Part shown: one piece after another, positions 1 through 24,447 of the stretch
Layout of the letters: every line of letters begins with the position of its first letter
Position numbering within the stretch: the stretch's first letter is position 1
From: Camelus ferus
Taxonomy: Eukaryota
Direction: 5' to 3'
DNA: 64,000 bases
Assembly (NCBI RefSeq): GCF_009834535.1
Contig: NC_045717.1
Coordinates: 21,390,001 to 21,454,000, forward strand
Notes under the pieces: model-generated
Database searches by the model: none
What the model was told of the DNA's origin: nothing
The model's input: the letters and a program-made list of their open reading frames with translations, nothing else
Position numbers and translations under genes: made by a program

Positions 1-340
1 CCACCTTTTCCTTTACAATGTGTCTCATTTAGAACTCCCGTACCCAAGTGCATAAATTACACTCTCTTAGGTTTTCTTCCCTTAATTTTTAAGTCTTGCT
101 TTCTTACTCTTAACTCTTTATTGAGAGTTTGATCATTTGTGTGTGTGGTGTGAGGTAAGGGTTGGATTTGGGTGTTTTTTCTTCCCCAGTTGTATGACAT
201 ATTGTTGCGCTGACTGACTGGCTCATCCAGTCCTCCTCTGTCTCCACTAGTTTCCGTTATGCTTGGGTCTGTTCTGGGCACACTGCTCAGTTCCATCAGT
301 ACATATGTATGTCCCCCACGACCACAACACTATGGTAATT
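1..340 (-). mobile_element. Old L1M fragment
   Basis: Degenerate text resembling the antisense end of L1 ORF2 (tctgggcacactgctcagttccatcagt...ccacaacactatgg). Confidence 0.55.
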
Positions 341-750
341 GCCAGGCATGCACAGTACACGTTTAAACACATGGGGTGTGTATTTCAAGCATGATCACGC
401 AGTTGTTAGCATGTCACAGGTTTTATGTGTCTCACTCATTCTCATACACAGCTGTGACCAGGCATCTCCCCAAAGTCCAGCTCCCAGCATCCCCATTCCT
501 ATTTCCCTTGGAATTGTGTCTGAGCTGATCATCCCATCCTAAATTTAATCTGTCTCCAGCATCGTTTGTTTCCCTTCCTCCATGGTATTGTTGTAAAACT
601 CCAGCAATTTCAATTTGGGGTTTTCAGGGAGATCCTTGCTCCAGCATCTAGCCACCCCTCAGAGTATAAACAGCTTCAATGGTTATTAAAGTGCCCGTCC
701 TCGCCCTCCTCCTCCCCCCCTGAATCTCCATCATCTCTTGTTTCCTTTCT

Positions 751-1103
751 TTTTTTTTTAAATATATTTTTATTGATGTATAGTCAGTTTACAATATTGT
801 GTCAGTTTCTGGTGTACACCACAATGCTTTGGTCATGTAGGAACATACATATATTTGTTTTCATATTCTTTTTAACCATAAGTTACTACAAGATATTGAA
901 TATAGTTCCCCATGCTATACAGTAGAAACTTGTTTATCTGATTTTATGACACTCCTCTTGTATTTCAAACTGAGAGACACTCTGCTAGATCCGACTCTGT
1001 AGGTGCTTCTGTGCAATTCAGTGGGTTTGTAGATGTAATTCTTGGTGCATTTGTGGGAGAGGGCGAGCTGTGAGTCTCCACCATCTTGGCTCAACCCCCT
1101 CTC
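751..1103 (-). mobile_element. Bipartite L1 element (5'UTR start fused to 3' end) with poly(A) and TSD
   Basis: The minus strand starts GAGAGGGGGTTGAGCCAAGATGGTGGAG (L1 5' end with a YY1-like motif). At ~948 it switches to an ungulate-type L1 3' end with AATAAA and an A tail. TSD GTTTCCTTTCT (740-750) / GTTTTCTTTCT (1104-1114). Confidence 0.78.
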
Positions 1104-1194
1104 GTTTTCTTTCTTAATAACCTCATTCAGCAAATAGTTATTGAACAGGTCCTCTGCCTACAATAGTTTATCTTCAATAGGATGTCGACATTAT

Positions 1195-1344
1195 CTTTTT
1201 TTTTTTTGTCACTCATTTTTGAATTAAAAAAATTAAAAAAATTTTGGGGGAGGTAATTAGTTTTGTTCATTTATTTATAATGGAGGCACTGGGGACTGAA
1301 CCCAGTGCTAAGCGGGCACTCTACCACTGAGCTACACCCTCCCC
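1195..1344 (-). mobile_element. tRNA-Ala-derived camelid SINE (Vic-1-like), internally deleted
   Basis: Contains CTCTACCACTGAGCTACACCCTCCCC and the GGGGGAGGTAATTAG tail motif. Confidence 0.85.
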
Positions 1345-1553
1345 TCCATGGATGATCTGTAGTTCAATTTGGAAGAATCAAAGAGTCCTTCCTCTCACAC
1401 CCTACGTCCAACCTATTGGCAAATCCAATCAACTTTACCCTCAGCCTCTGTCCCATCCAAAGCCTCAGAGACCACACTCAGAAAAGTAAAGTCCTGATGG
1501 CCTTGGGAGCCACGAAGGGTTCTGAGCAAAATTGTGCATGGACTCAGGTGCTC

Positions 1554-1572
1554 AGGGCGCCCTCTGGCGGCT
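1554..1572 (-). promoter_or_regulatory. Candidate CTCF site
   Basis: The minus strand reads AGCCGCCAGAGGGCGCCCT; its core CCGCCAGAGGGCGC fits the CTCF consensus CCRCYAGRKGGCRC exactly. Confidence 0.6.
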
Positions 1573-2215
1573 ATGGGGGACCAGAGGGCCGGGGACAAGT
1601 ATGGAAGACTGTGCTGGTCCAGGTGGGAGATGGTGGGGGCTGGACGCGGTAGGGCTGTGGAGGGGGTAAGAAGTGGGCAGAGTCGGGATAGATTCTGCAG
1701 ATGGAGCCAGTAGGACTTGCTGACGCCTGGATATCTGTCCTCGGAACGCCTCAGTCATGCAGGTGTTGGGAGATATTAATATTAATTTGAATCCTTACAA
1801 TCTGATACAGGAACCACTCGTCTGGGGTCTCACAACTGCCTCCATGTTTGTCCTTGTTGGCTGCGGGTACCTGCGGTGTGTATCCACTGTGCTTTCCTGA
1901 TTCTCTATGTCAAGGGCAGATGAGCCCAGCCATCGGCCAGTCTGGTGACTCAAAGCCTGAGTTATCAGAGATTTTAATAATAATAAAAGACATAATTGGA
2001 AAGAGATCAAAGGGGAACCAGGAACTGACCTGTCTTTGCCCCCTTCCCCAAATCTGGCTTCTAGAAGCTCCACAGAACCCACTGAGACCCCTTGAGCTGG
2101 CCCCACCCCTACGTTGTAAAGATTGGGAAACTGAGGCTCAGGGAGAGAAGCAGCTTGAAGACCTCCCCTCTGCTTACCGTATTTCCCACTGTTTCCCACC
2201 AGGCATGTGAATTTT

Positions 2216-2380
2216 TATTTTTTATATTTTTGCTTTCTTGGATTTGTTTTTGTTTTTTTGGGGGTAATTAGGTTTAGCTATTTATTTTTAAATTATTATT
2301 TTTAATGGAGGTACTGGGGATGGAACCCAGGACCTCGTGCATGCTAAGCACGCACGCTACCGCTGAGCTCTGCCCTCCCC
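2216..2380 (-). mobile_element. tRNA-Ala-derived camelid SINE with a 17-bp TSD
   Basis: TSD CCAGGCATGTGAATTTT (2199-2215) / CCAGGCATGTGGATTTT (2381-2397). Confidence 0.9.
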
Positions 2381-3496
2381 CCAGGCATGTGGATTTTATC
2401 AGAAACATGAGGCGGCATATGTTGGTATTTTCCCGCGGCCCCCACCGACCTGTCATCTGTCATCTCCTCTTCAGTCTCATCACCTCTCCCCGCAGTTTGC
2501 ATGTCTGGGGTTTCTTGGCCTTGCCTCTCCTCCCCTCTTCCTGCCTTGTTCAGTCCCCCTCCTGTCCTCCTCTCCATCTGCCCCTGCTGTCTGCACACAC
2601 AGCCTTCGCCTCACCCGCAGGTCCCCTCTTAAGCCTCCCGGACTCCCAGAAAGGGCTGAGCCTGAAGTGGGGCTCCAACTAGCAGCTCCTAAGAATACTC
2701 CACTGCCAGCATCTTGGACCACATTCAGGAAAGCAACACATGGAAGAAATAAAACACTCCCCCTTGCCCCGAGGCCTGAGTTCTTGCAAACTGGAGGGGC
2801 CATGGTGGCCTTGGGGTGGGGTGGGAGGACTCCCAGCGAGTTCCCAGCCTCCCTCTGCCCCGCTCTGTGTCTTCCAGTGTTTCTTGTTCATGGTCATCAT
2901 TCTCATCGTGGAAATCACAGTCGCCACAGTGGTCCTTGCCTTCTAACTGATAGTTAAGTACAGCACAGCTTTTCCCACTCCGCATTAGAAATCCACAGAA
3001 TTAATAGAAGCCCTGGGGCCCCCTCCCAGGCACCCACGCTCGCTGAGATCCGGTGATGGCGGTAGACTGGGCCTCCAGAGATGGGCCCAAAAACCTCAGC
3101 CTTCTTCTTAAAGGCTCCCCTCAAGAAACCTGTTGAGTTAATTTGACCAGCTCTCCTGCATTTGGGGTGAGGCTGAGGGAGTAATGGGAACAGCTGTAAA
3201 AGTTGTTGGGGTTTTGAAATGTATTCAAAATAGAGGGCTATTTAGCAAAATCCATCAAAATGACAAAGCACGGATCCTTTGACCCAACTGTCTGGTCTCT
3301 AGGAATTAACCAAGGATTTGCTTGTTCGCACGAAGAATGACATACATACCAGAGTGTGCAAAAGATTGCTTCCAGCCTAGGGAGCATCAGTGGTGGGGAG
3401 GGTTTAATGTATAATAATCCACATAAGCAAAGCCGACACAGATGGAAAGAAGGAGGCTCTATATACAGGAGACGGTCCATTTTCCAGGACATAGTG

Positions 3497-3895
3497 TTGT
3501 CCTCGTTTGTGTCCCCACAGAGGCCCACCCTGAGACAAAGATTTGAAGGCTTGTGGTTTATTTGACAGATGATTCCCGAGAAGCACCTTTCAGGACTGGG
3601 GCAGTGAGGCAGGGAAGGGCATGTAGCCCTTAAAAGCTGACACTATGGGCAACTGGACTCAGTGCTCAGTCCTGCCCGGGGACGTCTGGGATGCAGCGAG
3701 GAGCATGCAACTATTTTCTCCATCCCAGGGACGAGGGAGCCGCAGTATTGATCCGCCGCCTCCCATCAGTCATTGCTTGCGGGCTGCTCCCAGGCGCATG
3801 CGTGCTGAGAAGCCGCAGCGAGAACTTCGGTAGCTGGCGGGGAGCGTGCACAGAAATGAAAGAAGCCACCAGGATTTGAGCAAGTGCACTGCTAC
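3497..3895 (+). mobile_element. MLT1-type (ERVL-MaLR) LTR relic
   Basis: Typical MLT1 text (accctgagacaaagatttga...ggtttattt...gcagtgaggcagggaaggg). Confidence 0.6.
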
Positions 3896-4689
3896 TCTTG
3901 TTGAGAACAGCCCCGTGCAGAACCATGAGAGTAGTATAAAGCAAGGCGAACCATACTGAGAATATGCTTTGACACACATAGCAGGTCTCTTTTGGGACAC
4001 AGGAAACAGTAACAGTCGTGGCGGTGGAGTGGGAGAAACTTGTTGGCTGGGAGAAAAAGGTGGGAGGGAGACTTTTCATGGTCTACCCTTCTGTGCTTTG
4101 TGAATTTTGAACCATGTGACTATTTCACCTCATTGGAAAAAAAATTTGTTTTAATTTAGGTCTCTATTTAAAAAATAGAAAATTAAAGTTGTCCTTTTTG
4201 TGCAGAGAGATTCAGTTGCTAAAGATGATATTCAAGTCTTTAATCGAGTTACAGCCAAATCCGGGGTGGGGCGTAGCAGGCGTGTGGGCGACTCGAAAGA
4301 GCAGATGATTCAAACTCGTTTGTGTGGGTGGGTACACCCAGATGCGCTGGGCTTGAGACCCACGCTCATCCCCGTGTCTTTTTCTCCGGGCAATGGAAGC
4401 CTGAGTTCGTCGTCGTCCTCCTCCGGCGCAGACCCAGGGCTGGGGGGAGGGGCCGTGAAGGAAGCAGAAGGGAAGTCCCCCCTCCCCAACCCCAGGTCCC
4501 CAGAAACTTCACCCAGTGGAGCACCTAGGTGTCTTCTGTGTTCACCATTTTCCGTTTCATCTTTGAGGGTCACAAAGTGGCCTTCGTGACACTGAGGAAG
4601 AACTACAGAAGTTACAACGAGCCAGATGAACTATTCCATGGAATGGACTTTGGTCGTGGAGAAGGTGAGAGTCACATCTTTGTTTTTAC

Positions 4690-4910
4690 TGTGGTAAGAG
4701 AGACATAACTCAAGTTGATCATCTTAGCCATTTTGAAGTGTCCAGTTTTGTGGCATTAAGTGTGTTCCGTGGTTGTGCAACCATCCCCGGAACTGAAACT
4801 CTGTCCTCATTAAACAGTAACACTCCTTCCCTCTCCCCCCAGCCCCTGGCACCCACTGTCCTGTGTTCTACCAGTTTCTAGGAATTTGACTCCTCTGGGG
4901 ACCTCCTATA
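4690..4910 (-). mobile_element. L1MB/MA-type 3' end running into the N gap
   Basis: ttgtgcaaccatc...gaaactctgtcctcattaaacagtaac...cccagcccctggca...tttgactcctctggggacctc. Confidence 0.7.
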
Positions 4911-5163
4911 NNNNNNNNNNNNNNNNNNNNNNNNNNNNNNNNNNNNNNNNNNNNNNNNNNNNNNNNNNNNNNNNNNNNNNNNNNNNNNNNNNNNNNNNNN
5001 NNNNNNNNNNNNNNNNNNNNNNNNNNNNNNNNNNNNNNNNNNNNNNNNNNNNNNNNNNNNNNNNNNNNNNNNNNNNNNNNNNNNNNNNNNNNNNNNNNNN
5101 NNNNNNNNNNNNNNNNNNNNNNNNNNNNNNNNNNNNNNNNNNNNNNNNNNNNNNNNNNNNNNN
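4911..5163. other. Assembly gap (N run)
   Basis: 253 N. Confidence 1.
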
Positions 5164-5230
5164 AGAAATGTTGTGTAATTCTTTGAATGGCCGTGCCCTG
5201 CCCCCTTCCTTCCTGTCTCATTCTTCTCTC

Positions 5231-5318
5231 TTTTTTTTTAGTAGAAATACTGGGGATTAAACCCAGGACCTCATGCATGCTAAGCATGTGCTCTACCACT
5301 GAGCTATAAGCTCTCCCC
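5231..5318 (-). mobile_element. tRNA-Ala-derived camelid SINE
   Basis: actggggattaaacccaggacctcatgcatgctaagcatgtgctctaccactgagctata. Confidence 0.85.
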
Positions 5319-5534
5319 TCCTCTCTGTTTCTTAAACACACTTAGTAAGCTTCAGCCTCAGGGCCTTTTGACAGCTTGTTCCCTCTTTTTGGAATGCTGT
5401 TCCCTCAAATATCTGCATAGCTCCCTCCCTCACTTCATTCAGGTCTCTGTTCAAATGTCCCTTCCCAGGAAAGCCTGCCCTGCCCTCTCTTTCCAAGTTA
5501 TCCTCAACCCCTGTATCAGTCAGGCTGGGCTAAG

Positions 5535-6132
5535 TGATGCATTTAACACCAAGATGGTGGAAGATTCAACTCCCAGTAGACCTTGAGGCCCAAGATGGTG
5601 GGAAATTTAACTTCCAGTAGACCTTGAGCTTCATTACATGCTCCTTGTAATATATTAACATGGTAAATGGCACTCCCACAGGCACCATAACAGTTCTGAG
5701 GCTGACCATAAATGGCTAAAAAGTGAGCGGTGGCCCAATTCCTGGGAATCCCAGCCCCTTCCCCAAAGTAGTTGAAATAATCTTCCCACTTACTAGCATA
5801 TAAAGCTACCGAGCTCATAAAAACCAACAACCCCTACACCTTGTAGCCACTCTCCCTTCTAAGTGAGATGGACCACAATCTGTTTACGGACTGTGTATCT
5901 ACTTTTACTTTAAACTGAGCACCCAGCGCTACACCTCATGGCTTTTGTCTTGCCTTCTGAGACAGCCTGCTCTCTGTCTATGGAGTATGTATCTCTCTGA
6001 ATTAATATGCTTTTACTCAACTGTGGCTCACTCTTGAATTCTTTCCTGTGCAAAGCCAAGGACCCACACTTGTTGGGTTGTGTCCCAGGGACTCAACCGA
6101 GACCTGGGACATGGCCATCCTCTTACCCAACA
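5535..6132 (+). mobile_element. ERV1-type solo LTR
   Basis: Ends in the typical U5 text ctcttgaattctttcctgtgcaaagccaaggaccc...CA. Contains an internal ~41-bp tandem duplication at 5551-5630. The left boundary is approximate. Confidence 0.7.
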
Positions 6133-8991
6133 TTTTTCCTGTATCAAGACCAGCGTGGCTGGAGCTGAGTGAGTTAAAGGGAAGAGAGGGGAGATGAGGG
6201 CCCAGAGGTGACAGGGCAGATCGTGCAGTGCCTTGTGGGCAATGGTGAGGAGTTCAGCTTTTACCCCAAATAAGATGGAGCCATGACGGGGTGGTGAAAG
6301 GAGGTATTTAGCACAGGCTCTGGAACGTGGTGACTGCTCTAATAGTAGACCATTATTTCTATTGTTTTCAATTATTTTGATCATTGAAAGGGAGTCTTCA
6401 AGTGTCTATTCTCCTCGCTGCAGCTAAAGTGCTGTGGAGTGAGGAACTACACAGATTTTGCTGGCTCCTCCTTTGAAAGGACCACTGGCCACACCTACCC
6501 CAGGAGCTGCTGTAAATCCATTGAGACCGTGGCCTGTGATGGGCGCAATGTGTCCACAGATGTCATCCACCAGAAAGTAACTTGAGATTTTGTTGCGCGT
6601 CACCTGGGTAGACCCTGAGGGCTGGTGACTTCTACAAAAATTGCATTTTGGCAGGAACGCCAGTGATTTCAACCACAATTTCAGCTCATTTCGACCACAC
6701 AACCTAAGGTTACTATCCCCATTTCACAGATGGTGAAACTGAGGCCTGGGGAGGGGATTGGTTCAAGGTCACGTGGCTTTGGTTGAGCTTGAATTTGGAT
6801 CCGTGTTGGCCTGCGTCCATTGCCGGGGCCACACTGCCTCCCTCACCAAGATATTAAGCTCTAGCAATTATAATGGAAAACAATCGTTCTAACCATAGTG
6901 ATGGCCGCCATGTGACTGGGCACTCCTGCTGTGAATTCAGTCTCCATTGCACCCCTTGAAGTGGGGACTGCCCTTCTCCCATTTTACAGATGAGGAGACT
7001 GAGGCACCGAGAGGTTCTCATGGCCAGAGAGAGGTGGAGCTGGGCTTCAAACCCCATCCCTAGCTTCCAAACCCCTAACTTCTGCTGCAGATGAATGAAC
7101 CCAAGGCTCTCCCCCTGAGGGAAGAAATAAGAGTCATTTCTTAATTCATCCCTTCATATTGAATGGCTCCTGCTGGGTGCCAGGCCAGAGCCTCGGAGAT
7201 GGACATGGTGCTACACGCTGGCTCACTGTGCCTGCACAGCCTGCCTGTCAGCTCCCGACCTCCTCTCCCACTCACTCCATCACTCATTCCCCTCCAGCCA
7301 CACTGGCCTCCTCGCTGCTGCACAGATAGACCAGGCACATGCTTGCCTCAGGGCCTTTGCACAGGCTATTCTTTCTTCCAGGAATGCTCTTCCTCTAAAT
7401 GTTTTCCTACCTCACCCCTTTCAAGCCTGTGTACAATTGTCAGGCTGTTCCTGACCCCCTATCTATAAAAGGACACTGCCACAGTCACCATCACACTCTG
7501 TCTCCTTACCCTGCCTCAGGGTCTGCCCAGCACTGAATCACCACCTGACAATGTGATTACTGTACTTGTGTATTACCTGTTTTTTCCCCTCAACCCCATC
7601 AAGGCGGAAATGTCTATTTTGTATGTTGCTGGGTCTCCAGCACCCAGTCCAGTGCCCAGCACAGAGCGAGCACTTAATAAATGCCCATTAAATAAAAGGG
7701 GGACACTGACCCTTTGAGCTCAAGGCCAGTCAAGCTTCCAGAAGAAAGAGGAGCATCTCAGCGACCACAGGAAGGGAAGCGGGGGCCCATCCCCTGCAAG
7801 TGGCTGGCTGTTCTGCCCAATCACTGTCTGGTCTGTTGATCTCTCTAAACCTTAGTCTCTTCATCTGTAAAACAGAGAATAGACTAGTGCCCACCTTATG
7901 GGGCGTATAGTGAGAAAATACATGTAAATGGCTGAGAAGGTGGTGGATGCAGGTTAGCCCTTCTGTTCATATGTAAAGAGCTCTCGGAAATGACAGTTCC
8001 TGAATGCCGACTATGGGTCAGGCCACTGCTGTAGATTCTGTCTTAAACCTCACAAAAATCTTGTGAGGCAGATCCTACTGGTCTATTTACACTTGGGGAA
8101 ACCGAGGCACAGAGAGGTGTGGTGATTTCTCCAAGGTCACACAGCTAGCTTGGGACACAGCTTGGGACATCTGGTCCTGCTCTTAATCACCATACTAGGA
8201 TGTTAGCACAAATGGACACTGGGGAGGAAGTGGTATGTTCTGGAGTGGGGTAAAGGAATGAGGAGGCCAGGGAAGATGTTGGGGTGGGGGAAGCAGTCCA
8301 GCAAGAACGAGCCAAGGTCCTTGTCACTGTGTCCCTTTCTCTTCCCTGAATCTGAGAGGAATGTTGGTAGTCTGCCTGGCGGGGGGTTGATGGGGACTTG
8401 GAATCCACAAGTCCCTGACCAGGTCCTGCTTACTCTGATGTTTGTATCCACAGGGCTGTTCCCCTAAGCTCCTGAAAATAACCAAGACTCAGAGCATCAA
8501 CCTGAGTGGGGTCTCCCTGGGGGCAGCAGCAGTGCAGGTATGGCCCAGCTCCTCTGCGACACACTGAGCTCTTTCATCGAGCCCCTACTTACTGTGTGCC
8601 CAGCGCTGTTCGGGACACTGGGGACACAGCAGTGACAAAAGACAAAATGCCTGCCATGGCGGAGCTGACATGGTGGGGATGGATGACTGTTTGGTTTAAG
8701 ATACCTGCTGAGAAGGAAGTAAAAGAGGGTGATGAGATAGGGAAAGGAATCAGGGATGGCCTCCCTGAGGAGGTGAGGAAAAGCCATGTGTGTGTATATG
8801 GGAGAAGACAGAGGGAAGAGCTGGTGCAAAGGCCCTCAGGTTGGCTTTTTCAAGGACCAGCAAGGAGGCCTTTATGACTGGAGAAGGGTGGATGAGGAGG
8901 GTGGTAGGGGGAGATGAGGGCAAGGCCTTGTGGGCTACAGAGAGGGGTTTGGTTTTTATTCTGAGTATGATGGAAAGCCGTTAGAAGGGTT

Positions 8992-9143
8992 TAATTTTTT
9001 AAAATTATTTTTATTTTCAAAAATTTTTGCGGGGGAGGTGATTAGGTTTATTTATTTACTCTTAGAGGAGGCACTGGGGATTGAACCCAGGACCTAATGC
9101 ATGCTAAGCATGCGCTCTACCACTTGAACTATACCCTACTCCC
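8992..9143 (-). mobile_element. tRNA-Ala-derived camelid SINE
   Basis: Full head with A and B boxes and the GGGGGAGGTGATTAGG tail motif. Confidence 0.88.
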
Positions 9144-9145
9144 GC

Positions 9146-9870
9146 CAGAAATTTTAAAATATAACAAAACAGAAACAGAGTCATAGATACAGAGAACAAA
9201 GAGGCGGTTGCCAGTGGGGAGGGGTGTGGGGGGAAGAGAGGAAGAGATGAGGGAGATTAAGAGGTACAAACTTCCAGTTGCAAAATAAATGGGTCAGGGG
9301 TATGAAATGTACAGTGTGGGGAATACAGTCAGTAACTGTGTAATATCTTTGTATGGTGACAGACAGTCATTAGACTTATCGTGGTGATGATTTTGAAATG
9401 GATAGAAATGGCGAATCACTATGCTGTGTAATAGGAACTAACATGGTGTTGTTGGACAGTTATACTTCAAATACAAACAAACAAACAAAATCACAGGAAA
9501 AGAGATCAGATTCATGGCTGCCAATGGCAGGGCATGGGGGGAAGAGGGAACTGGATAAAGACAGTCAAAAAGTACAAACTCCCAGTTATAAGATAAAAAG
9601 TACTAGGAATACAATGTGCATGATAAATAGAATTAACACTGCTGTATGTTATGTAGGAAAGTTGCTAAGAGAGTAAATCCTAAGAGTTCACATCAGGAAA
9701 AAAATTTTTTTTTCTTTAATTTTGTGTCTATGAGATGACGGATGTTCACTAAACTTATTTGGTAATCATTTCCCTATGTGTGTAAGTCAAATCATTATGT
9801 TATACACCTTACATTTATAGAGAGCTGCATGTCAATTACATCTCAATAAAACTGGAAGAAAAAAAAAAAG
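9146..9870 (+). mobile_element. Two adjacent L1MA-type 3' ends with A tails
   Basis: The first unit ends in (CAAA)n at ~9490; the second ends tctcaataaaactggaagaaaaaaaaa at ~9870. Confidence 0.8.
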
Positions 9871-9877
9871 AACCGTT

Positions 9878-11085
9878 TTTACTCACAGCACTTCTGACAC
9901 CAAATGTGTGGGGGTTTTCCACACCACTTCTCTGTGGGCACCACCTGGGTGCCCTACAGTTCAATTCCAACCCTACCTAAACTCTACAGGCTAAGGGCTC
10001 AGTCCCACAAGACCGCCCTCCACCTCAGATGCCGGTCACCAGTATTGGGTCCCCAGAGTACTCGTTATGAAGTCCAAGTTCGTACTGCTCGCTGCACAAC
10101 AGGCCAATAAATCGAGAGACAAGTTGTTGAGGCGAGGGAGCAACCCTATTCGGAAAGCCAGCAGACCGGGAAGATGATGGACTAGTGCCTCCAAAGAGCC
10201 ATCTTGCCTGCATTAGAATTCAGGCTTCTTTTATACTGAAAGGGGCGGGAGTAAAGCCAAGCATTTCCGGTTCCTGTTGGGCTCGGGGTTGTTAATTTCT
10301 TCCTGCCTTCACAGGTGGGCCTGGTCACAATGTTTCCTGTGAGCTAAAAAGGCATTTTCACTTAATGGTCATTACCTGGGAAGCAGGATTCCCAGAGATG
10401 GGCTTATAGGCAATGTCCCTTTAGTGATTAACTAGCAAGAGAATACAAAGGTTAAAGTAAAAGAAACATGGGACACAGAGTCAGGTTTGTTCTCCCCTCT
10501 GACATGCCATACTCTTCTCTGACTTGGCTACAAAATCAGGGGGCCCTTGCAATCCCCCCTCCCTTTCAGGTTTGATAACTAGAATAATTCACAGAACTTA
10601 GGAAAGTGAGTTACTTACTATTACCAAGGATGTAACTCAGATGGGAGAGATGTACAGGGCAAGGTATGGGGAAGGGGCCCTGAGTTTCCATGCCCTCTGT
10701 GGGTGTGCCACCCTCCCTCAGTGTGTTCACCAAACGGGAATCTCTCCGAACCTTGTTGTTCAGGGTTTTTATGGAGATTTCATCATGTGAGCACGGTTGA
10801 TTAAATCACCAACAGTTGGTGATTGGCTCGATCCAGCCCCTTTCCTCCCTGGACCCTCACTCCCAGGAGCTGGGGTTGATAGTTTCAACCCTCTAATCAT
10901 GATTTGGTCTTTCTGGTGACCAGCTTCCATTCTGAAGTTTCCCAGGGGCCCCCAGCCTAGGCTGTCTTCTCATTTGTATACAAAAGACACTCTTATCACT
11001 CCGGAGATTCCAAGGGTTTTAGGAGCTGTGTGCCAAGAAAAACCAGGACCAAAATCCAACTATTTCTTTTCTGTTGTATCAGACA
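9878..11085 (-). mobile_element. MER21-like LTR interrupted by a younger LTR
   Basis: Both halves resemble MER21 (actcacagcacttctgacaccaaatgtgtggggg...; aaaagacactcttatcactccggagattccaagggttttaggagctgtgtgcca). Confidence 0.75.
10063..10504 (-). mobile_element. ERV1-type solo LTR nested in the MER21-like LTR
   Basis: gttatgaagtccaagttcgtactgctcgc...ctctgaca, with TATAAAA on the minus strand at ~10230. No clean TSD seen. Confidence 0.7.
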
Positions 11086-11180
11086 GGAAAGAGCTGGATG
11101 TGGCCACAAAAATTTTTTAAATCCATGCATTTGAAGTGCTGATATTATAGTGAAGAAACACTTGTTTAAGTTAAACAAGA

Positions 11181-11315
11181 GGGGAGGGTATAGCTCACTG
11201 GTAGAGCACATCCCTAGCACGTATGAGGTCCTGGGTTCAATCCCCAGAACCTCCATTAAAAAAAAAAAAAAGTAAACCGAATTACCTCCCCCCAGAAAAT
11301 AAATAAACATAAAAT
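11181..11315 (+). mobile_element. tRNA-Ala-derived camelid SINE with TSD
   Basis: GGGGAGGGTATAGCTCACTGGTAGAGC...GGTTCAATCCCC. TSD AAGTTAAACAAG / AAGTTAAGCAAG. Confidence 0.9.
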
Positions 11316-14300
11316 TAAGTTAAGCAAGTAAATTATATAGTATTTTAGACACTAGGGGCTATGGGGAGGAGGACACATAGAAAGGGGCATCAGAAATGCT
11401 GGGGAGGGGTTGCAGCACTAACTAGGGGGGTGGGGAGGGAGATGAGTCAACAAGAAGGTGAGATTTGCACAAAAGGCATGAGGGGAGCCATGTCACTCCA
11501 GGCTGAGGGAACAGCCAGTGCAAAGGCCCTGAGGCAGGAGCCTGGTGTGTTCAAAGCAGCAAGGAGGAGCAGAGCAAGTGTAGGGGGCAAGTGGGAAGAG
11601 TGACAGGGAGAGCAGTGAGGTGACAGGTCAGATCATGCAGGGCCTTTTGGGTCACAGAGTCAGGTAGGAGCCATGGAGGGTTCCGAACTGACAAGGGACC
11701 TGACCTGGCTCAGGTATTCACTGGTGCCCTCTGGCTGCTATGGGGACCAAACTTCTTGCCAGAATTGGTTGAGGAAACATCAGCTTCCTTGCCCTCCATG
11801 CACTGAAACTTTCCAGGGTCAAGGTGGTGGCCACGAGGCCCAGCTAGAGGCAGCCCCACATCTGAGGCTCCCTGGCCTGATCTGGGTTCTACTATATGAC
11901 ACACAGCCCTTGACCAACCATCTACTTGGCTGTGTTTCAACCATCCTCTTCCTGGAAACTGCATTTCACTAATGGAAATAAAAGAACCACCACATACGGA
12001 CATAATGACTTTAATTTTCTTTTTCTTTTGTGGAGAAAAATGCACACCTTTCTGAGTGGACATCAAAGAATGGCTTATATGGGAGAACCACATCCAGGAT
12101 ATAAATGACCAGGTCCAAAGCTTGAGCCATAGAGTATTTTGGGATCATTGGGAAGAAGCCAGTTAGCAGAATCAGTGCTTCAACAGAGAGACCAAAATGT
12201 TCACCCCTTACTTATTTTTTTTTTTGGTTGAGTAGGAGAGAAAGCTACAAGAACATGGTCCCTGGAGAAGCCAAAGAAAGAAAAAGAAAGAAAGAAAGAA
12301 AAAAAACTAGAAACCCAAACCCAAAATAGCAGTCATAGCAATTTCCCACTGAAACTGCCTATGGAAAGACAAGTTCCTGAAAGCAGGTGATAAGAAGGCA
12401 CAGTGTGGATGCAGGAAACAGCCTCAAGTCACCTCCCCAGATCCCAGCCTCCCTGGAGTTGGGAAGTCGTTTTCCCACAGCCTTTGGCTTAATTTCTGTT
12501 TGTAAACTCAACACACTTCCATCCCCTGCAGTGATCTTCATGTATGTTTCAGTTTCCCAGAGACCATCAGGAGTGAAACCTCCCCTTCAAACATCGTAAA
12601 ATAAAAACTTGCATTATTTTTAGAGGAAACAACAAAAAAAATTCTTCTACATCATTCCCAGTCTCGAGAGAACCCAGAGGCAGCTGTCTCAGTCACTACT
12701 TGAAGCTGAACTACTGAAAAATCTTATGTAAACAGAAACCTTAGGCCAGGTCAGGGACTAGATGCAGCCAAAGCTGTGTTTCATCACATGGGAAAAGTCA
12801 GCTTGTCCCTCAGATAATGGCACTCTGACCTGCTGTATTTTTTCTGGCTGCAGTCTGTTGGCCAGTCCAACAGAATCTTGACAGGCGGTGGTGCATCTTA
12901 AGAAGCCTTTTTATAGTTGCTTTAAATTCTCCCTTATGTTAAAGCAACTAACATGTTTGACTCCCACCCCAAAGCTTCAGGTACCCTCACCTGATGCATT
13001 TCCAGGAACTTGTCCCTCCCACCACAGTCGTCTAACTTGGTGGACAAATATCCCCACTTTGAAGCTCTAAGAACAGCCCCCAGTATGGGGTGAACGGAGC
13101 CCTGTAGACATAAACTCAATCTTCAGCTTCTATAAAGAGCTATGTTGAACTTGAACCAGATCTTCCCCACTCCTGGGAGGAGGTTGAGTTCTTCAAGGCT
13201 ACGGGAATTTGTTTTGGAGGCGGAGGCTGGGAGGCTGCCAACGGGAACACAAATCATTCGCTTTGGCCATCCGCAGTGTCAGGTTCTGGAGTGTTAGTGT
13301 TGCAGGGCAGATAGAGGTGGCATGCTACCAGAATTTGGACTCTGGTGGGTAGAAAGAGCTGCTGAGTTGGGTGGGGGGCGGGGAGGCATCAAGATATAGA
13401 TCTCCAAACTGCGCATCACTTCCTAGCAGGGGCCCCTGGCAGCTGAGGACCCCAGTTGGGCCAGTTCCCTGCTGGTGCCTCCACCTGGGAGGCCGGTTCC
13501 CCGCCCATACCCCATCAGCGCGCCACTCCCAAGGTGTATCGCCTAGTGCAAGCAGCAACAGCCGTCAACCAACCCTGCCTCCTCGCCTCTCTAGCCCAAC
13601 CCCAAAGCATTCCTTAGATGACTCCTCCATGAGCAGAAAACATCACTGGACCCTTGCGGTGACATGGCTCGGGAAGCCAGCCATGAGTGGTCTAGGGTTT
13701 TCAAGTCGGAGGAGCCAAAGTCCTCACATCGGAAAAGCTGTCCCGGCAGCTCAAGCTACAGGAATGTTACTCAATTTCCTTTTCTAGCAGGATGTCAGAT
13801 GTGGAAAGACCTTGCTTAAAACATTACCAGGCAAAGAAGGCCGGGGCGGGGGCAGTGGGGTGGCAGGTCTGGGTAGGAGAGCCCCATGCTCCTGGCTCCT
13901 GAGTTAACTCCTGGTAAAAAGCCCCCAGCAGGAATGCCAGGGGTTGAGTAATTCTCTGCCTGGCCCGATGAAGCCCATAGTTCCAAAATCCCATTCTGGA
14001 TCAGGGATCCAGTGGATAAGCTGAAACAGTGGCAGGGACATGAGTGATGTGGAATTCTGGGGAAGCTCAGAAGGCACTTCTGGGGTCCCTGAAGCCGAGT
14101 GGAGTGGGGCGGGGGAGGTCTGACCCCCTCTTCCTTTATAATGGGAAAAGCCGCTTTAATACTGCTTTCACAGGCAGAGAAGCTGCAGGTCAGAAGGGAG
14201 GGGTCTGCCAGGGCCAAAATCCACTGCCCCGCCTCGGAGCCCTGAGGTCTGAGAAGGTTCACAGGCAGAGCCACCTTCCTCATCTCCAGGGATGAGAACC

Positions 14301-14717
14301 CACACTGCACGAGACAGATGAACCATCTTCAGCCAGCACGTGAACTCCAAGCCATGACCAACACAGAACGGAGTGGACAGTGGTTCTGACCCAGAAGGCA
14401 CTGTGGATGTCCCTCCACCAGGTGGGGAGGGACACGCTGCCCACACTACCCCCATTAAAACGCCTGAAAGCAGCAAGCTCGTGCACGCCCATATCCCCAG
14501 ATTCTGCCCACAGTGCAGGATCCTCAGGGTCTGGAGCCTGTGACAGCGGCTGCTTGGGCAGGCTGGTGGCCATGGCCAGCGAATGAGCCATGCAGGGCTT
14601 GGGGATGGCTGAGGGGAGGCGAGGGGGCGCCCTGAGCTTGGAAACAGCCCTTGTGGCTCATGCCTCAGTCACAGTCCCTGCCGAGGCAGGAGGGGGTGGG
14701 GGGATGGGGGACCATTT

Positions 14718-17700
14718 CTAGCAGCTGCAGCCACTGGGCTGCGGGGGTGGGGTGTCCCCCAAGGCCGGGCCTTTCCCATTGCTGCCCGGGCTGGAGCTAG
14801 GTTCCAGGGACTCATTCATCTTCTCGCAGATGACGTCCACCAGGCGCTCAAACACCTGCTTCACGTTGATGCTCTCCTTGGCGCTGGCCTCGAAGAACTC
14901 AAAACCTGGAGGGACATAAGGGGGAACACCTATGAGACCTCAAGGGGCATAGCCTGGGCTGTGGCATCACCCGAACTTGGGTTCCAAGCCCAGTTCTGCC
15001 CTTTGTGCGGCTGTGGGACCTTGGCTGAGTCTCTTAGTCTCTCTGAGCCTCAGTCTGCTAGTCTGTAAAGTGGGAACAATGATGCTTTGGATGCTGATAA
15101 AAATCTGTGGCAACAGCTCTTGCCTGCACTACTTTGCACATCTCTTTGTCACAAGGCAGTGGTGGCCAGAGTCCTGGTTGTAACATTCTGGTGTCCAGCA
15201 GGTATGGGGGTGCCTGGGTGAGTGGGGTTCATTTTCCACCCAATGTCTGCTGCCCAGGAAGGCACAGCCAGGCTGCCCACAAAGCCAGATATTTATGTGG
15301 ACTTTTTTAATGCAGCCAAGTATTTCACATGTTCTGGAAAATAATGCTCCAGGTCAAGTGAAACAGAGGACTGAGCAGTGGCTGAGGGCTGGCTTCAGCC
15401 CAGGGGCTGGTGGGTTTCAGACTTTGTAGAGAGTATACAATGTGCACAGTCCCTGGCCTACAGAATACACTAAAAATGGTGATACTAATGTTAATAGGCA
15501 GTGCTGACGTCACGCTTATGACGTGGCAGGCATTTTTCTAAGCACTTTATGTAAACTAACTCATTTAAGGATGCTCTGAGGTTCAGACTTTTACAGCCCA
15601 TTTTACAGTTGGGGAAACTGAGGCGCGGAAGAACAGTCATTCATGTAAACTCACCCAGGTAGCACAGCCAGGCTGCCTGGCTGGGAATAATAAAGATTAA
15701 ACATTCCTATTGTGTCACCTGGGGCCTCAGGAGGGAGGGCAGGCTGGCTGGCTGACTTCTGGGGAGGGAGATGATGGTGAGGTCGTTTTGAATATATTCT
15801 TAGCATCACAGTGACTGTCATAACCTGTTTCTCCTTTTCAAAAAATGTTTATACCCCTAGAGGTGAGAAGTGGTACAAATGCTTTGGGGACTTGCCCAAG
15901 GTCCCTGGGCTATAGAAGTGACCACTCAACCTACAAATAAGGGTGTACATAACAGTCCTTCTTGCACCCCTAAAAGGCTGGCTCAGGATCTGCCTGCTGG
16001 GAGCTGACCCTGAATGGTCCCTGATGTGTCCCCATCTGCCATCCCTGCCAAGGTAGGCCAGGAATTCAGACAAACACCCACCCTACTGCATACAGAACAG
16101 GGTAAACGGTCTTTACCCTAGCATTGTATCATGCTGCACTATAAAAATGTACTCATAATTATTTATGTGTGTAATTATCCATTTACTGTCTCTGCTACTA
16201 GAAAACCAGCTCCAAGAGGCCAGGATTTCTGTCTGCCTTGTCCACGTCTGCAGCTTGGTGCTGGGCACAGAGCAGGTACTCAAAAGTACTTGATAAATGA
16301 TGGATTGATGGATGGATGGATGGATGGATGGATGGATGGATGGATGGATGACAGAGGCAGGGAACCAACACAGATCTCTCCTCTAAGCCTGGTGATCATC
16401 AGTGTCGCCCCTCTGTCTTCCTAGGCAAAGCTGGCATTTCCTTAATTGTGTCTGGCTCTGCCTCAAATAAGCTGAGGACTTTTTTCTTTTTGAACACTTT
16501 TTTCTTTCTGATTATAAATATTCAGTGAAGAAATTCACTGGAGAAACTAGAAACTACTGAAAAATATCAAGACAGACAGAAAAGTGTAACCTCATCACCC
16601 AGAAACAATTACTATTGGCGCTTTGATGATCAACTTTCCACTCTTTTTGAAAATATAAATACACAATTGTTGGGGTTCAGTTTGTAGAGGGTATGTGCAT
16701 GTGTGTGCACGTATGTGGCCTTTTTCTTACAACATGGGGGTCAAATTCTATCTCCCGCTTTGTATTGTAATATTTTAAATTTAATGGAGAGTGGGAGTCT
16801 CCCCTCACCCCCAGGAACTAGCTGTTTTCTGCAAGGAGGTGTGGGGAGCATCCTCAAGTATTCCAGCCCAGGGCCAGGCCCCCAAAGCTGAATCCCCAGC
16901 ACATCTGGAAATCAGACCCAGGCTGAGGTTCCCAGAAAACACAGGGGACAGAGGAGCAGGTTAAATGGCACCATGATGGAGCAGACTGAAACCCCAAATG
17001 GGAGACATTCCACAGACATTCCAGTTTCTCCAATAAATGATGGCAAGAAAAAAAAAAAAAAGAGGGGGCGGGTAGAGCTTGTGTTTGGCATGCATGCGGT
17101 GCTGGGTTCAATCCCCAGCACCTCCATTAAAGTAAATAAATAAATAAACCTAATTACCTCCTCCACCAAAAAGAATTTAAAAATTTAAAAGATTAAAACA
17201 AAAAAGAAAAAAAGAAAGGGAAAAAAAGAAGAAAGGAAGAAGGAGGACCATTATGGTCCAGGGGTCTGCAAACCATCTCCATAAAAGACCGGAGTAAATG
17301 TTTTAGGTTTTCTGCACAAGCATCAGCAATAGTTCACAATCATGCTAGCTAACACCTGAATGCAACCTAAGAGTTTGCCAGGCTCTGTTAGAACCGCTTC
17401 ATACATCATACCTCGTGTAACCCTCCTGACGACCTGATGAGGTGGGGCTGTTATTATCTGCATTTCACACATGGGGAAGTGCAGGCCCAGAGAGCTGAAG
17501 TCACCAGTACAAGATCACAAAGCAATCAAGAAATAACACGAGTTAATGTTCAATCAGAGCATTTGCTTATTGAATCTTTCTAACAGCCCTAAAAAGGAGA
17601 CGTAGTTTTCACCTGTTTCCTAGATGAACACATAGAAGCCCAGAGAGGGTAGGCGAGGTGCCCAAGGTCACACAGCTAGTGGGTTGCAGAAGGGGATTCT

Positions 17701-19935
17701 AGCTCCAGAGTCTGGATCCTTAACCCACCCTCCCCTGTAGTGGTTACACTGCCTCCCGCAAGGGAAGTCCAGGGGAGGGCCTAGAATACTAGGATACTCC
17801 AGGACAAGATTTTCTTCTAGCTTAAACTGAATCACTAATCCATTCACCTGATTCAGAGAGGTGGACTGAAAAGTTCCCCTCCCACCGAGGTGCCCTGGCC
17901 TCCTAGTTCTCAGACACAAAGCTCACCACTGTTTCTGTATCCTCTTGGAGTTCCTTTCAGCAAACCTAAGTATACATCCTTCTTCTCACCCATTTTATAG
18001 GCTAATGTAGGAGTTGGCAGACTTTGAGCCACAGGCCAAGTCTGGCCTGTTGCCCATTTTTGTAAATAAAGTTTTACTGGCAGATAGTCACCCTCAGTCA
18101 CTGACGTATTATCTATGGCTGCTTTCAGGCAGAGCTGAGTGGTTATGACAAAGACCCTAGGGCTGAAAATATTTCCTTCCTGGCCCATTAAGAAAATGTT
18201 TGCTAAAAAAAAAAAAGTTTGCTGATCCCTGGACTTAAAGGAAGTGGCCATAACCACTATTCTGCAGTTTGCTTATTCCATTTAACCATATACCACAGGG
18301 ACCCCTGAACATAAAGAATGTCCTCATCCTTTTTAACAGCTGTGTAATATTCCACCACAGCACTATACTTCATGTGTAGCTGTCTTCTCCACTGTGAGAT
18401 ATTTGGAAAGTTGTCAAGGTTTTCTACTACTAACGGTACTATAATTTGATATACTTGCCACTTCCCACATAGGTGCAGATGTTTGTAGGATAAATTTCCA
18501 GAAATGGTTTTGCTGAGTCTGGGTTCCCAGGGCAGTGGGGAAGTAAGGAGTACCTGTGGGTGAATCCTCTGAAATTAAATGGAGAAGGTGATATACATGT
18601 GGGTATTCTTCTGGGCAGATCTTCAAAGGGCAAAGGGTTGATGACTGTGGTAGGATCTGGGACTCGAGCACGGGGATGGGGGTTTTGTTCTGGGAGGTCC
18701 AGGGCCTGTGGCCCAGGCTGGGCACTAACCAAGGTCATCGGCGAGCCTCCGGCCCTCCTCAGTGGGCACCACACGTTCGTCCTCCAGGTCACACTTGTTC
18801 CCCACGAGGATGACCTGAGCATTGTCCCAGGAGTAGGTCTTGATCTGTGTGGCCCTGTGGAGTTTGAGGGCTGTTAAGCCAGAGATTAGGGTCAGGGGGA
18901 GAGGGCAATGGTCGGGAGGGGTCAGCAAGCACTCACCAGTCCTGCACGGCAGCAAAGGACTCCTGGTTGGCAACATCATACATGAGCAGGAAGCCCATGG
19001 CTCCGCGGTAGTACGCTGTGGTGATTGTACGGTAGCGCTCCTGGCCAGCCGTGTCCTGGGCACACAGCAGGGTCAGGCATCTAGAAGTCACTCTGTTTCC
19101 TACCTCACCCCTGCAGGACCCTGTCACAGCCCCAGTCTGATGGGAGAAACACAGACCCCTACCTTGAGGGGTTCCCAGTCTAAGGGGTCAGTAGCCTCTC
19201 AGGGATTTATCAACCTCTTTGACCTCATCTCCAAGAACCAACTTCACGACAACAAACAAGAACCACCTGGGCCAGAGCGCGCCACCTTGACGCAGGCAGC
19301 CTGGTGCTCGTTACCATGACAACCACTAGTAGCCGGAGTGATTTTTTTGGGGGGGGAGCAGGAGCATGGCTCTGAAGAGCAGGCAGGCTCAGTGGGGGCA
19401 CCCCTGGCTTACCCAGAAAGGGTACCCAAACCTCTTCCCCATTGGTCACCAGGACTTGCAGCCCACATTGGGTGAGTACTGTCTCCCCCTCAGACCCCAC
19501 AGGGCAGGGCACGTCCCCCCCACCCTGATGAATTCATCTTGTAGATCACACCACTCTTCACACCTACCCCGAGCCCCCTCCCTGACTTTGGGCCACTCTC
19601 CCTCAGCTGGGACCCATCCCCACAGCCCGACACTGTCGCCTGGACTTCCCATGAGGAACCCTAGGTCCTGCCTGGCCAACAGACCCACAGACAGCTGCCT
19701 GGCCCACCCAGATCTGCAGCTTGATCCTCTTGTCATGGCGGTAGACCGTCTTGACCTTGAAGTCGATGCCCACGGTGCTGACAAAGGCGGGCGTGAAGGA
19801 GTCGTCGGCGTAGCGGAACAGGAAGGACGTCTTGCCCACGCTGCTGTTGCCGATGAGCAGCAACTTGAACATGTAATCAAAGTTCTGGTCTGCTGCATCC
19901 CGCTGGCCCGTCTGGGGGTCTCCCGCTGATGCCAT
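14718..19935 (-). CDS. RAB3D: Ras-related protein Rab-3D, 219 aa
   Basis: Coding exons 19935-19708, 19055-18937, 18854-18730 and 14905-14718 sum to 660 nt. Motifs [20 protein letters not shown] and SAK are present, and the C-terminal CSC prenylation motif is followed by TAG. Exon 2 acceptor at 19984; non-coding exon 1 at ~21510-21380. Confidence 0.98.
15490..15670 (+). mobile_element. MIR
   Basis: tttctaagcactttatgtaaactaactcatttaa...cccattttacagttggggaaactgaggc. Confidence 0.7.
15505..15529. promoter_or_regulatory. Full CRE plus UPRE/CREB3-XBP1 motif in RAB3D intron 4
   Basis: TGACGTCA at 15505-15512 and ATGACGTGGCA at 15518-15528. Confidence 0.5.
16299..16350. repeat. (GATG)n tetranucleotide microsatellite
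   Basis: Directly visible at the end of an L2 tail. Confidence 0.95.
17063..17240 (+). mobile_element. tRNA-Ala-derived camelid SINE with deleted A box
   Basis: gctgggttcaatccccagcacctccattaaagtaaataaataaataaacctaattacctcc followed by an A-rich tail. Confidence 0.85.
18010..18231 (+). mobile_element. MER58A-like hAT-Charlie MITE
   Basis: aggagttggcagact...gcccatttttgtaaataaagttttactgg...aaagtttgctgatccctg, with terminal inverted repeats recognisable. Confidence 0.8.
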
Positions 19936-21157
19936 CTTGACAGGGAGCCTCCTGAGGGGGCGGAGGTGGGGAGGGCTGGAGCCCTGCAGGGAAATATAAT
20001 GCCAGGAATGGCTCCAGTGTCTACATCGGACCTGGGCTCAAATCTTGACTCTGTCACTTGGAAGCCAGGTGACCCTCGATGCAGCACTTGCTCTCTATCA
20101 GCCTCAGTGTCCTTTTCTGGACAATGGGGATGTTTGTCAAATTCAAGGACCTGGATTTGGGGCAGGAGGCATGGGGTGCCCAGTAGGGCGGCTGAGGAAA
20201 CAGACCCTGTGGAAGGTACAGGTGTGGACTTTGCCCCGGGGTGAGCAGCCGGCGTGGCCCAGGTGTGAGCTGGAGGGAGGAGGGGCTGCCAGCTGGATAG
20301 AGCCCCCGCCACCTCAGGGCCTGGGTGTTGACTTTGGCAGGTGTTGGCCACCTGCCTGCTCCTACCGAAGCCATGTTTAACCCCTTCCATGACCCCCATG
20401 GGGAGGGGGGTTTCAGTGGATACAGCCCAGGTTTAAAGCCCAGCTCTACCCCCCAGTAGGTACTGCCATCTTCTGTTTGTCAAAAGGGCCGGGCCCATCT
20501 CCCTCCTGGTAGGGCTGACTCACCCCAGCTCCAGCCCATGGAGGCCAGAGCGACAGTCCCCAAATCCAAGGAAACCACCCCAGCCGCCACCACGACCACC
20601 TGGTCCTGCCTTTCCCGGCCACCTGTCCCCACAGCTGGGCTGCTTCATCTTGGTCCAGCATATCCCCTCAGCCCTCATTGCGTCCCTTGGCCTCAGCTTC
20701 CCCCAACAGTTTACGGCTACTCCCTGAGCCTCTCAGAGAGGCTCCAGAAGGCCTGGGTGAATGGGCAACCGGCAGAGGAACCCCTGGTAAAGTCATTTCT
20801 CAATTGCCCGTGTGGCTTTTTTTCCATTTTAAAGGAGGACCCAACCGGCCTCCCCTTTCCTGCCCAGCCCTCTGCCCCACCCCATGTTCCGGGAGAACGA
20901 GTTTCAGGAGGGGAAGAGAAGAGGCAGGAAGACTTTCCCCATGCCGAGCAGGGCTGCCAGATTGGGTCCCCCGCCCCACCCCACCCCCAGCCCCAGCCCA
21001 CCTGTTTGGCCTCTGGTCCCACTTCTTTTTGATCATCTGCGGACCCTTCCTCACGCCTGGCACTAGGTGAGAAACCCGGAGGGCTCAGCCTTGTCCCCCA
21101 TCACTAGATGTGGGGCGCCCCAGCCAGTGCAGGAGAGTGCAGGAGCTTCCTCCCATC

Positions 21158-21167
21158 ACCATATGGT
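21158..21167. promoter_or_regulatory. MIST1 (BHLHA15)-type E-box in RAB3D intron 1
   Basis: Perfect 10-bp palindrome ACCATATGGT. Confidence 0.65.
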
Positions 21168-21379
21168 CCCATCTCAAGTCCCCAGCTGGGCTGTCTGCCC
21201 CGCCCGCGCCCCATTAAGGCTCCCCGATGAGCCCAGCTGGCTGGGGGCGAGGGAAGAGGCGTCCCCCGCCGCCTGCCTTTGTTCCCAGGCCCCGGGCCCT
21301 CCCCCTAAGCCCCTGTTGCCCCAAGACCTGCTGGGACGCGGAGGTGTGGGTCTGGTTGCGCTCCCTCCGAAGGGGTCAC

Positions 21380-21600
21380 CTCGCGTGGGGGGTGCTGCCC
21401 GCGGGGGTTCTGCCTCCAAACTCGCTGCGGCCTGGCCCCGGTTGCGACCCCGACCCCGCAGCCGCCACCGCCGCCGCTGCCCGCAGCCACCCGGATCCCG
21501 CGCCGGCTCCGCCCAGGTGGGGGTAGGAGGGGCCGCTCCCGGCTGAGGGCGGGGCGGGGCTTGTGGAGAGCGGGGGAGGGGCTGGAAGCAGCACCGCGTG
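21380..21600 (-). promoter_or_regulatory. RAB3D: RAB3D CpG-island promoter and non-coding exon 1
   Basis: CpG-rich segment with tandem GC boxes (GGGGCGGGGCGGGGC, ~21546-21560) and a candidate donor GAG|GTGACC at 21380/21379 on the minus strand. Confidence 0.75.

Positions 21601-22743: not shown

Positions 22744-24447
<1,704 letters not shown>

What the first reader, a model, noticed from the sequence alone, without database searches (positions are those of the whole stretch)
2878..2960. Premature TAA and damaged donor in TSPAN16 exon 3: lineage gene loss
Seen: the 75-nt TM3 exon carries TAA at codon 23 (2944-2946), and the donor reads GTTAAGT, resembling GTAAGT with an inserted T. Together with the independent exon 4 lesions, this argues for real pseudogenisation rather than one sequencing error. 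Inference: TSPAN16 is a unitary pseudogene in this lineage.
Basis: partly seen in the sequence, partly recalled or inferred. Interest (0 to 1): 0.7.

Follow-up and report, generated by a model that had tools for sequence, protein, structure and literature searches.

The report
Dead TSPAN16 gene in a camel
The camel copy of TSPAN16, a little-studied membrane-protein gene expressed in blood and testis, is a real dead gene at its normal chromosomal place, with a stop codon, a frameshift and a missing last exon; this is a clear but ordinary gene loss.

Summary
Window 2878-2952 (+) is the 75-nt TM3 exon (exon 3) of TSPAN16. Codon 23 is TAA (2944-2946), where cow and hippo have TTC and rhino has TTA. 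The donor GTTAAGT carries one extra T compared with cow GTAAGT.

The gene is identified by Pfam, by 80-84% identity of exon 5 to TSPAN16 proteins, by intron-level homology to hippo, cow and rhino TSPAN16, and by RAB3D lying downstream on the opposite strand.

There are more lesions:
- Exon 4 (4568-4664) is 97 nt instead of 108. It has a 12-nt deletion and a 1-nt insertion that shifts the frame into a TGA in exon 5.
- A deletion of about 6-8 kb removed the last coding exon.
- Exons 5 and 6 are intact. Exons 1-2 lie upstream of the window.

The lesions are not an assembly error. Contigs from an independent RNA library match exons 3 and 4 with no differences, and six other samples hold every sampled 31-mer of 2700-4760.

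Skipping exon 3, which is an annotated isoform elsewhere, does not rescue the frame. No camelid TSPAN16 protein turned up in two homology searches.

Not settled: whether alpaca and llama share the lesions, and read support for the terminal deletion.

A beaked whale copy is also decayed. This is a new member of a known kind, of low to moderate interest.

The parts
2878..2952 (+). TSPAN16 exon 3 (TM3 exon, 75 nt, phase 0), with an intact acceptor
   Evidence: translation aligns to residues 90-114 of cow, hippo and rhino TSPAN16.
2944..2946 (+). Premature TAA at codon 23 of exon 3
   Evidence: the orthologous codon is TTC (cow, hippo) or TTA (rhino). A contig of RNA run X24 is identical here.
2953..2959 (+). 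Intron 3 donor GTTAAGT, with one inserted T compared with GTAAGT or GTGAGT
   Evidence: alignment. Only 3 of 9 positions match the CAG|GTAAGT consensus, against 5-6 in the orthologues. A bulged register is possible.
4568..4664 (+). TSPAN16 exon 4, 97 nt instead of 108, with intact acceptor and donor
   Evidence: An X24 contig covers 4551-4727 with 0 differences.
4581..4582 (+). Junction of a 12-nt in-frame deletion that removes the conserved L-E-H-N/T of the VALEH motif
   Evidence: alignment to hippo, cow and rhino exon 4.
4629..4630 (+). 1-nt insertion (GATGAACT against GATGACT), a +1 frameshift
6424..6576 (+). TSPAN16 exon 5 (CCG and PxSCC motifs of the large extracellular loop), intact in its own frame
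   Evidence: Pfam PF00335, E 2.7e-6; 80-84% identity to TSPAN16 proteins..
6474..6476 (+). TGA reached in the frame imposed by the exon 4 insertion
   Evidence: conceptual translation with or without exon 3.
8454..8537 (+). TSPAN16 exon 6 (84 nt), intact with its splice sites
9018..9152 (.). Junction of a deletion of about 6.4-8.3 kb that removed most of intron 6, the last coding exon (LPGILATLLLFIKLG-stop) and the sequence downstream of it. A tRNA-derived SINE fills the junction.
   Evidence: window 9018 to 9152 corresponds to hippo L001 17659 to 25982 and rhino L003 14514 to 20948; hippo and rhino share the missing DNA; no exon 7 anywhere in the 64 kb; tRNA-like SINE head at 9070-9135.
19708..19935 (-). 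First coding exon of RAB3D, the synteny anchor downstream of TSPAN16
   Evidence: Rab motifs; 97-99% identity to RAB3D proteins.

Best explanation
Window 1-9150 holds the 3' two-thirds of the orthologous TSPAN16 gene, which has become a unitary pseudogene. Any transcript that includes exon 3 stops at TAA inside TM3. A transcript that skips exon 3, as the annotated 219-aa isoform does in other mammals, hits the +1 frameshift in exon 4 and stops at a TGA 17 codons into exon 5, before the CCG motif. No transcript can encode the end of TM4, because the last coding exon is deleted. So no four-pass tetraspanin can be made, and any spliced mRNA with these early stops would be expected to undergo nonsense-mediated decay. 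Shown: the lesions, the orthology, and the presence of the exon 3-4 lesions in independent samples. Inferred: absence of protein, mRNA decay, fixation, and the age of the loss.
For: Identity: Pfam tetraspanin hit on exon 5; best library matches are TSPAN16 proteins; collinear intron homology to hippo, cow and rhino TSPAN16 loci; RAB3D downstream on the opposite strand. Lesions: TAA; donor +T; exon 4 with -12 and +1; TGA in the shifted frame with or without exon 3; terminal exon deleted. Reality of the sequence: X24 contigs have 0 differences over 2844-4253 and 4551-4727; X15-X20 hold 1.00 of the sampled words of 2700-4760; X1-X14, under three organism labels, hold 0.97-1.00 of 2300-4800. No camelid TSPAN16 protein appeared among 115 and 160 hits, whereas cow, deer, pig and hippo did.
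Against: Exons 5 and 6 and all their splice sites are intact. The window-branch dN/dS of 0.58 (bootstrap 0.29-1.28) is not clearly above the 0.36 of the other lineages, so long neutral decay is not demonstrated. The terminal deletion rests on this assembly alone. Exons 1-2 and the promoter lie outside the window. The k-mer shares show that the broken allele is present in each sample, not that an intact allele is absent.
Confidence: 0.9

Rival explanations
1. Assembly or sequencing artefact: the true gene has a sense codon and a 108-nt exon 4.
For: The finding came from a single assembly. Raw-read depth in X22 was only about 2x, and differences are listed only from 3 reads.
Against: An independently sequenced RNA library gives contigs identical across both exons. 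Six further samples hold every sampled 31-mer of 2700-4760. Four separate lesions in two exons would not arise from one error.
Confidence: 0.02
2. A segregating loss-of-function haplotype: the broken allele is common, but an intact allele persists in the species.
For: K-mer presence cannot exclude heterozygosity. dN/dS on the window branch is not clearly elevated, which allows a young loss.
Against: At least 20 runs under three organism labels hold 97-100% of the words. The haplotype carries at least four independent lesions plus a multi-kb deletion, which takes time to accumulate. No camelid TSPAN16 protein model was found.
Confidence: 0.05
3. Residual function: the locus still makes a truncated two-TM peptide from exons 1-2(-3), or acts as a non-coding RNA.
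For: RNA runs from reproductive tissue hold 73-79% of the words of 2700-4760. Exon-3-skipped isoforms are annotated in many mammals (PMC6773723). A GUUAAGU donor can be used through a bulged U1 register.
Against: The RNA contigs are collinear with the genome across intron sequence, with no splice joints, so they may be pre-mRNA or contaminating DNA. Every spliced form ends early and lacks the end of TM4.
Confidence: 0.04

Closest known systems
Intact TSPAN16 of other laurasiatherians (Bos indicus P0068/L002, Diceros bicornis P0058/L003, Hippopotamus amphibius P0063/L001)
   Same: Same chromosomal position, same exon sizes for exons 3, 5 and 6 (75, 153 and 84 nt), same splice phases, and 72-83% identity across introns.
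   Different: The orthologues have a sense codon at codon 23 of exon 3, a 108-nt exon 4 and a seventh coding exon. The window has TAA, a 97-nt exon 4 and no seventh exon.
Exon-3-skipped TSPAN16 isoform (219 aa; human isoform 3, NM_001282510)
   Same: It removes exactly the 25 residues encoded by the exon that carries the TAA (PMC6773723), so it would bypass the stop and the altered donor.
   Different: In the window this isoform still meets the exon 4 frameshift and has no terminal exon.
Decayed TSPAN16 in a beaked whale (Mesoplodon densirostris, L010)
   Same: Independent erosion of the same gene. There is no match to exons 2 and 7, the exon 3 donor is mutated, and exons 4 and 5 carry indels.
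   Different: The lesions differ: the donor G is changed to T, exon 4 has -4 and -2, exon 5 has -6, and CCG is changed to CCD. None is shared with the window, so the events are separate.
Absence of TSPAN16 from mouse and rat
   Same: Another mammalian lineage that lives without the gene. Mouse is reported to have lost two more tetraspanin lineages than human (PMC2965184). That the missing one is TSPAN16 is my own recollection; the paper text I read does not state it.
   Different: Other rodents keep a TSPAN16 model (gerbil, Acomys, Sigmodon, Peromyscus). The rodent event is unrelated to the camel one.
Other unitary pseudogenes reported by this scan in the same genome (TNFRSF6B, HELZ2, TSPO2, CPNE7, NOX5)
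   Same: The same kind of finding: an orthologous, intron-bearing dead gene in a camel genome (AI notes that I did not check).
   Different: Different genes. For several of them lesions shared with alpaca were reported, which I could not test for TSPAN16.

Membership tests
Tetraspanin family (PF00335), TSPAN16 orthologue | Sequence match to the tetraspanin profile, with the CCG and PxSCC motifs of the large extracellular loop | tested here: met
   PF00335, E 2.7e-6 on the exon 5 frame (27.6 bits, below the whole-protein cut-off because only one exon was scanned). LKCCG...PRSCC is present.
Tetraspanin family (PF00335), TSPAN16 orthologue | The closest relatives are TSPAN16 rather than another tetraspanin | tested here: met
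   the best hits to exon 5 (80-84% identity) are proteins named tetraspanin-16.
Tetraspanin family (PF00335), TSPAN16 orthologue | Conserved synteny and intron-level homology | tested here: met
   collinear blastn blocks through introns 2-6 with hippo, cow and rhino. RAB3D lies downstream on the minus strand.
Unitary pseudogene | Keeps its introns at the ancestral locus (not a processed or duplicated copy) | tested here: met
   exons 3-6 are separated by introns with canonical AG and GT boundaries at the orthologous positions.
Unitary pseudogene | Lesions that destroy the open reading frame and are real in the DNA | tested here: met
   TAA, +1 frameshift; no last exon. Searches give independent sample support for exons 3-4. 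The terminal deletion is supported by the assembly only.
Unitary pseudogene | The gene is functional in related lineages | tested here: met
   full-length 244-aa models in ruminants, pig, rhino, horse, bats, primates and afrotherians. Pooled dN/dS is about 0.36.
Unitary pseudogene | No intact paralogue elsewhere in the genome | not testable with these tools
   Only the 64-kb window is available. Indirectly, no camelid TSPAN16 protein was found.
Unitary pseudogene | Lesions fixed in the species and shared across the lineage | tested here: inconclusive
   97-100% of the words are held in more than 20 runs under three organism labels. New World camelids were not reached (searches were blank).

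The most novel reading that the evidence does not exclude
TSPAN16 was lost in the common ancestor of all camelids and, independently, in cetaceans and murid rodents. That would make it a recurrently dispensable blood and testis tetraspanin whose repeated loss tracks some shared change in sperm or blood-cell membrane biology, rather than plain drift.
Probability: 0.07. Interest if true: 0.5.

Novelty: new member of a known kind. Interest (0 to 1): 0.25.

Why it matters
TSPAN16 has no established function; the review table I read lists only blood and testis expression (PMC8761850). A natural knockout in camels, alongside a decayed copy in a beaked whale, shows that large mammals can do without it. 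That is useful for anyone weighing TSPAN16 variants in male-infertility or blood-expression studies. It also helps genome annotation, because camel annotations should carry it as a pseudogene. It does not open a new mechanism. I found no paper that mentions TSPAN16 together with camels.

Tried and rejected
1. Laying DNA contigs of the other two organism labels (X2, X14) on exons 3-4 laid nothing, because a filter left them out.

2. Reaching other camelids failed by every route I had:
- Exact look-ups of 16 ATG-started window ORFs near the lesions: none is in the collection.
- A RAB3D-exon search gave no camelid entry, only 90% clusters headed by other species and ORFs on metagenome contigs. 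The contigs I fetched (L004-L009) are from a non-camelid mammal, about 79% identical in introns.
- Two metagenome scans with exon 3 and exon 4 patterns found nothing.

3. Pig and warthog loci: the isoform proteins are not on record.

4. Dating the loss from dN/dS: the bootstrap interval is too wide to be useful.

5. Rescue by exon 3 skipping, or by alternative GT or AG sites near exons 4 and 5: the frame is not restored (and inspection).

6. An RNA gene or another feature on either strand at 2878-2960: Rfam finds only the tRNA-like heads of SINEs elsewhere in 1-12000.

Full report
**Observation.** After the acceptor ...tcttccag comes a 75-nt exon at 2878-2952 that translates CFLFMVIILIVEITVATVVLAF*LI. 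TAA lies at 2944-2946, codon 23, and the exon is followed by GTTAAGT.

**Identity of the gene.**
- A downstream open stretch at 6424-6576 carries LKCCG...PRSCC and matches Pfam Tetraspanin.
- A search of 1.8 billion representative proteins with that exon returned TSPAN16 proteins at 80-84% identity as the best hits.
- tblastn with those proteins placed exon 3 at 2878-2952, exon 4 near 4568-4664, exon 5 at 6424-6576 and exon 6 at 8454-8537.
- I fetched genomic TSPAN16 loci of hippo (L001), Bos indicus (L002) and black rhino (L003). They align collinearly with window 1-9000 through the introns. Window base 1 lies about 140 nt downstream of exon 2, so exons 1 and 2 are outside the window.
- RAB3D lies downstream on the minus strand. 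The scan's other notes place PLPPR2 and EPOR further along the window; I did not check those two. This gene order matches my recollection of the human 19p13.2 region, which I did not check here.

**Lesions**.
1. Codon 23 of exon 3 is TAA, against TTC in cow and hippo and TTA in rhino.
2. The intron 3 donor has one extra T after GT. Only 3 of 9 positions match the CAG|GTAAGT consensus, against 5-6 in the orthologues.
3. Exon 4 is 97 nt instead of 108. A 12-nt in-frame deletion removes L-E-H-N/T of the conserved VALEH motif (junction 4581|4582).
4. A single A is inserted at 4629-4630 (GATGAACT against GATGACT). This shifts the frame and leads to TGA at 6474-6476 in exon 5.
5. The last coding exon is missing. 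Window 9018 to 9152 corresponds to hippo 17659 to 25982 and rhino 14514 to 20948. Hippo and rhino share the intervening 6-8 kb, which includes exon 7. Neither tblastn nor short-word blastn finds exon 7 anywhere in the 64 kb. A tRNA-derived SINE fills the junction. That fits a repeat-associated deletion, but this is an inference.

Exons 5 and 6 and their splice sites are intact.

**Are the lesions real?**
- Run X24 is an RNA library from reproductive tissue. Its contigs cover 2844-4253 and 4551-4727 with no differences or gaps.
- Six further samples (X15-X20) hold every sampled 31-mer of 2700-4760.
- Fourteen DNA runs under three organism labels hold 0.97-1.00 of the words of 2300-4800.
- Raw reads of X22, at about 2x depth, show no listed difference.

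An assembly error is therefore excluded for exons 3-4.

**Can the gene still work?** The donor GUUAAGU could still be used. A U1 register with a bulge at +2/+3 has been validated experimentally in human genes (PMC4856993), so I do not count the donor as a killing lesion on its own. The 219-aa X2 isoforms of hippo and human lack exactly exon 3, and such skipping would bypass the TAA. The exon 4 frameshift still stops translation before the CCG motif, and no transcript can encode the end of TM4. The RNA contigs are collinear with intron sequence and show no splice joints, so they do not demonstrate a processed mRNA.

**Extent and age.** No camelid TSPAN16 protein appears among the hits of two searches, although ruminants, pig, hippo and many other mammals do. 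This fits pseudogene status in annotated camelids, but it is only an absence from a list. A parsimony count on 127 codons gives dN/dS of 0.58 (0.29-1.28) on the window branch, against 0.36 (0.20-0.62) pooled for the other three lineages. That is too imprecise to date the loss. Earlier notes of this scan call the genome Camelus; I did not test this. I could not obtain alpaca or llama sequence.

**Context.** TSPAN16 evolves fast in mammals (PMC2965184) and is listed as expressed in blood and testis without a defined function (PMC8761850). A beaked whale copy (L010) has no match to exons 2 and 7. It also has a mutated exon 3 donor, indels in exons 4 and 5, and CCG changed to CCD. None of these is shared with the camel, so that decay is independent. 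Several other mammals have only partial or 'LOW QUALITY' models. I found no paper that links TSPAN16 and camels.

**Verdict.** It is an ordinary gene loss: a new member of a known kind, of modest interest.

Noticed in passing
L001:9033-9038 (hippo) and L010:12436-12441 approx. (beaked whale): The first base of the exon 3 donor is not G in either whippomorph: hippo has CTAAGT and the whale has TTAAGT. Both gene models still read ...FFPIL-RD... across the junction. Exon 3 splicing may already have been altered in their common ancestor.
   Followed up: partly
L010 (Mesoplodon densirostris TSPAN16 locus): The whale TSPAN16 looks decayed. There is no match to exons 2 and 7, exon 4 has -4 and -2 nt, exon 5 has -6 nt, and CCG is changed to CCD. 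A ribosomal protein S26 retrocopy is called inside the gene range.
   Followed up: partly
window:2941-2959 and 4568-4576: Seven substitutions and one insertion are crowded into six consecutive codons around the exon 3/exon 4 boundary (FFPIVQE becomes F*LIGHK). This is far denser than in the rest of the coding sequence. It could be one complex mutational event or local relaxation of constraint.
   Followed up: no
window:2700-4727: Four RNA-seq runs labelled 'reproductive system metagenome' hold 73-79% of the words of exon 3, intron 3 and exon 4, as unspliced contigs at depth of about 4. This may be pre-mRNA, read-through transcription or contaminating DNA; no silent control stretch was laid.
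   Followed up: partly
window:2252-2390, 5231-5338, 9040-9146, 11163-11268: Copies of one tRNA-derived SINE family, seen as Rfam tRNA hits and self-blast matches. The copy at 2306-2355 tripped the read-laying filter. The copy at 9040-9146 sits exactly at the deletion junction.
   Followed up: partly
window:4911-5163: A run of 253 N lies inside TSPAN16 intron 4. It does not touch any exon.
   Followed up: no
L004-L009: ENA metagenome assemblies and Logan contigs carry the RAB3D first coding exon of a non-camelid mammal, about 79% identical to the window in introns. This is host DNA in metagenome assemblies.
   Followed up: no
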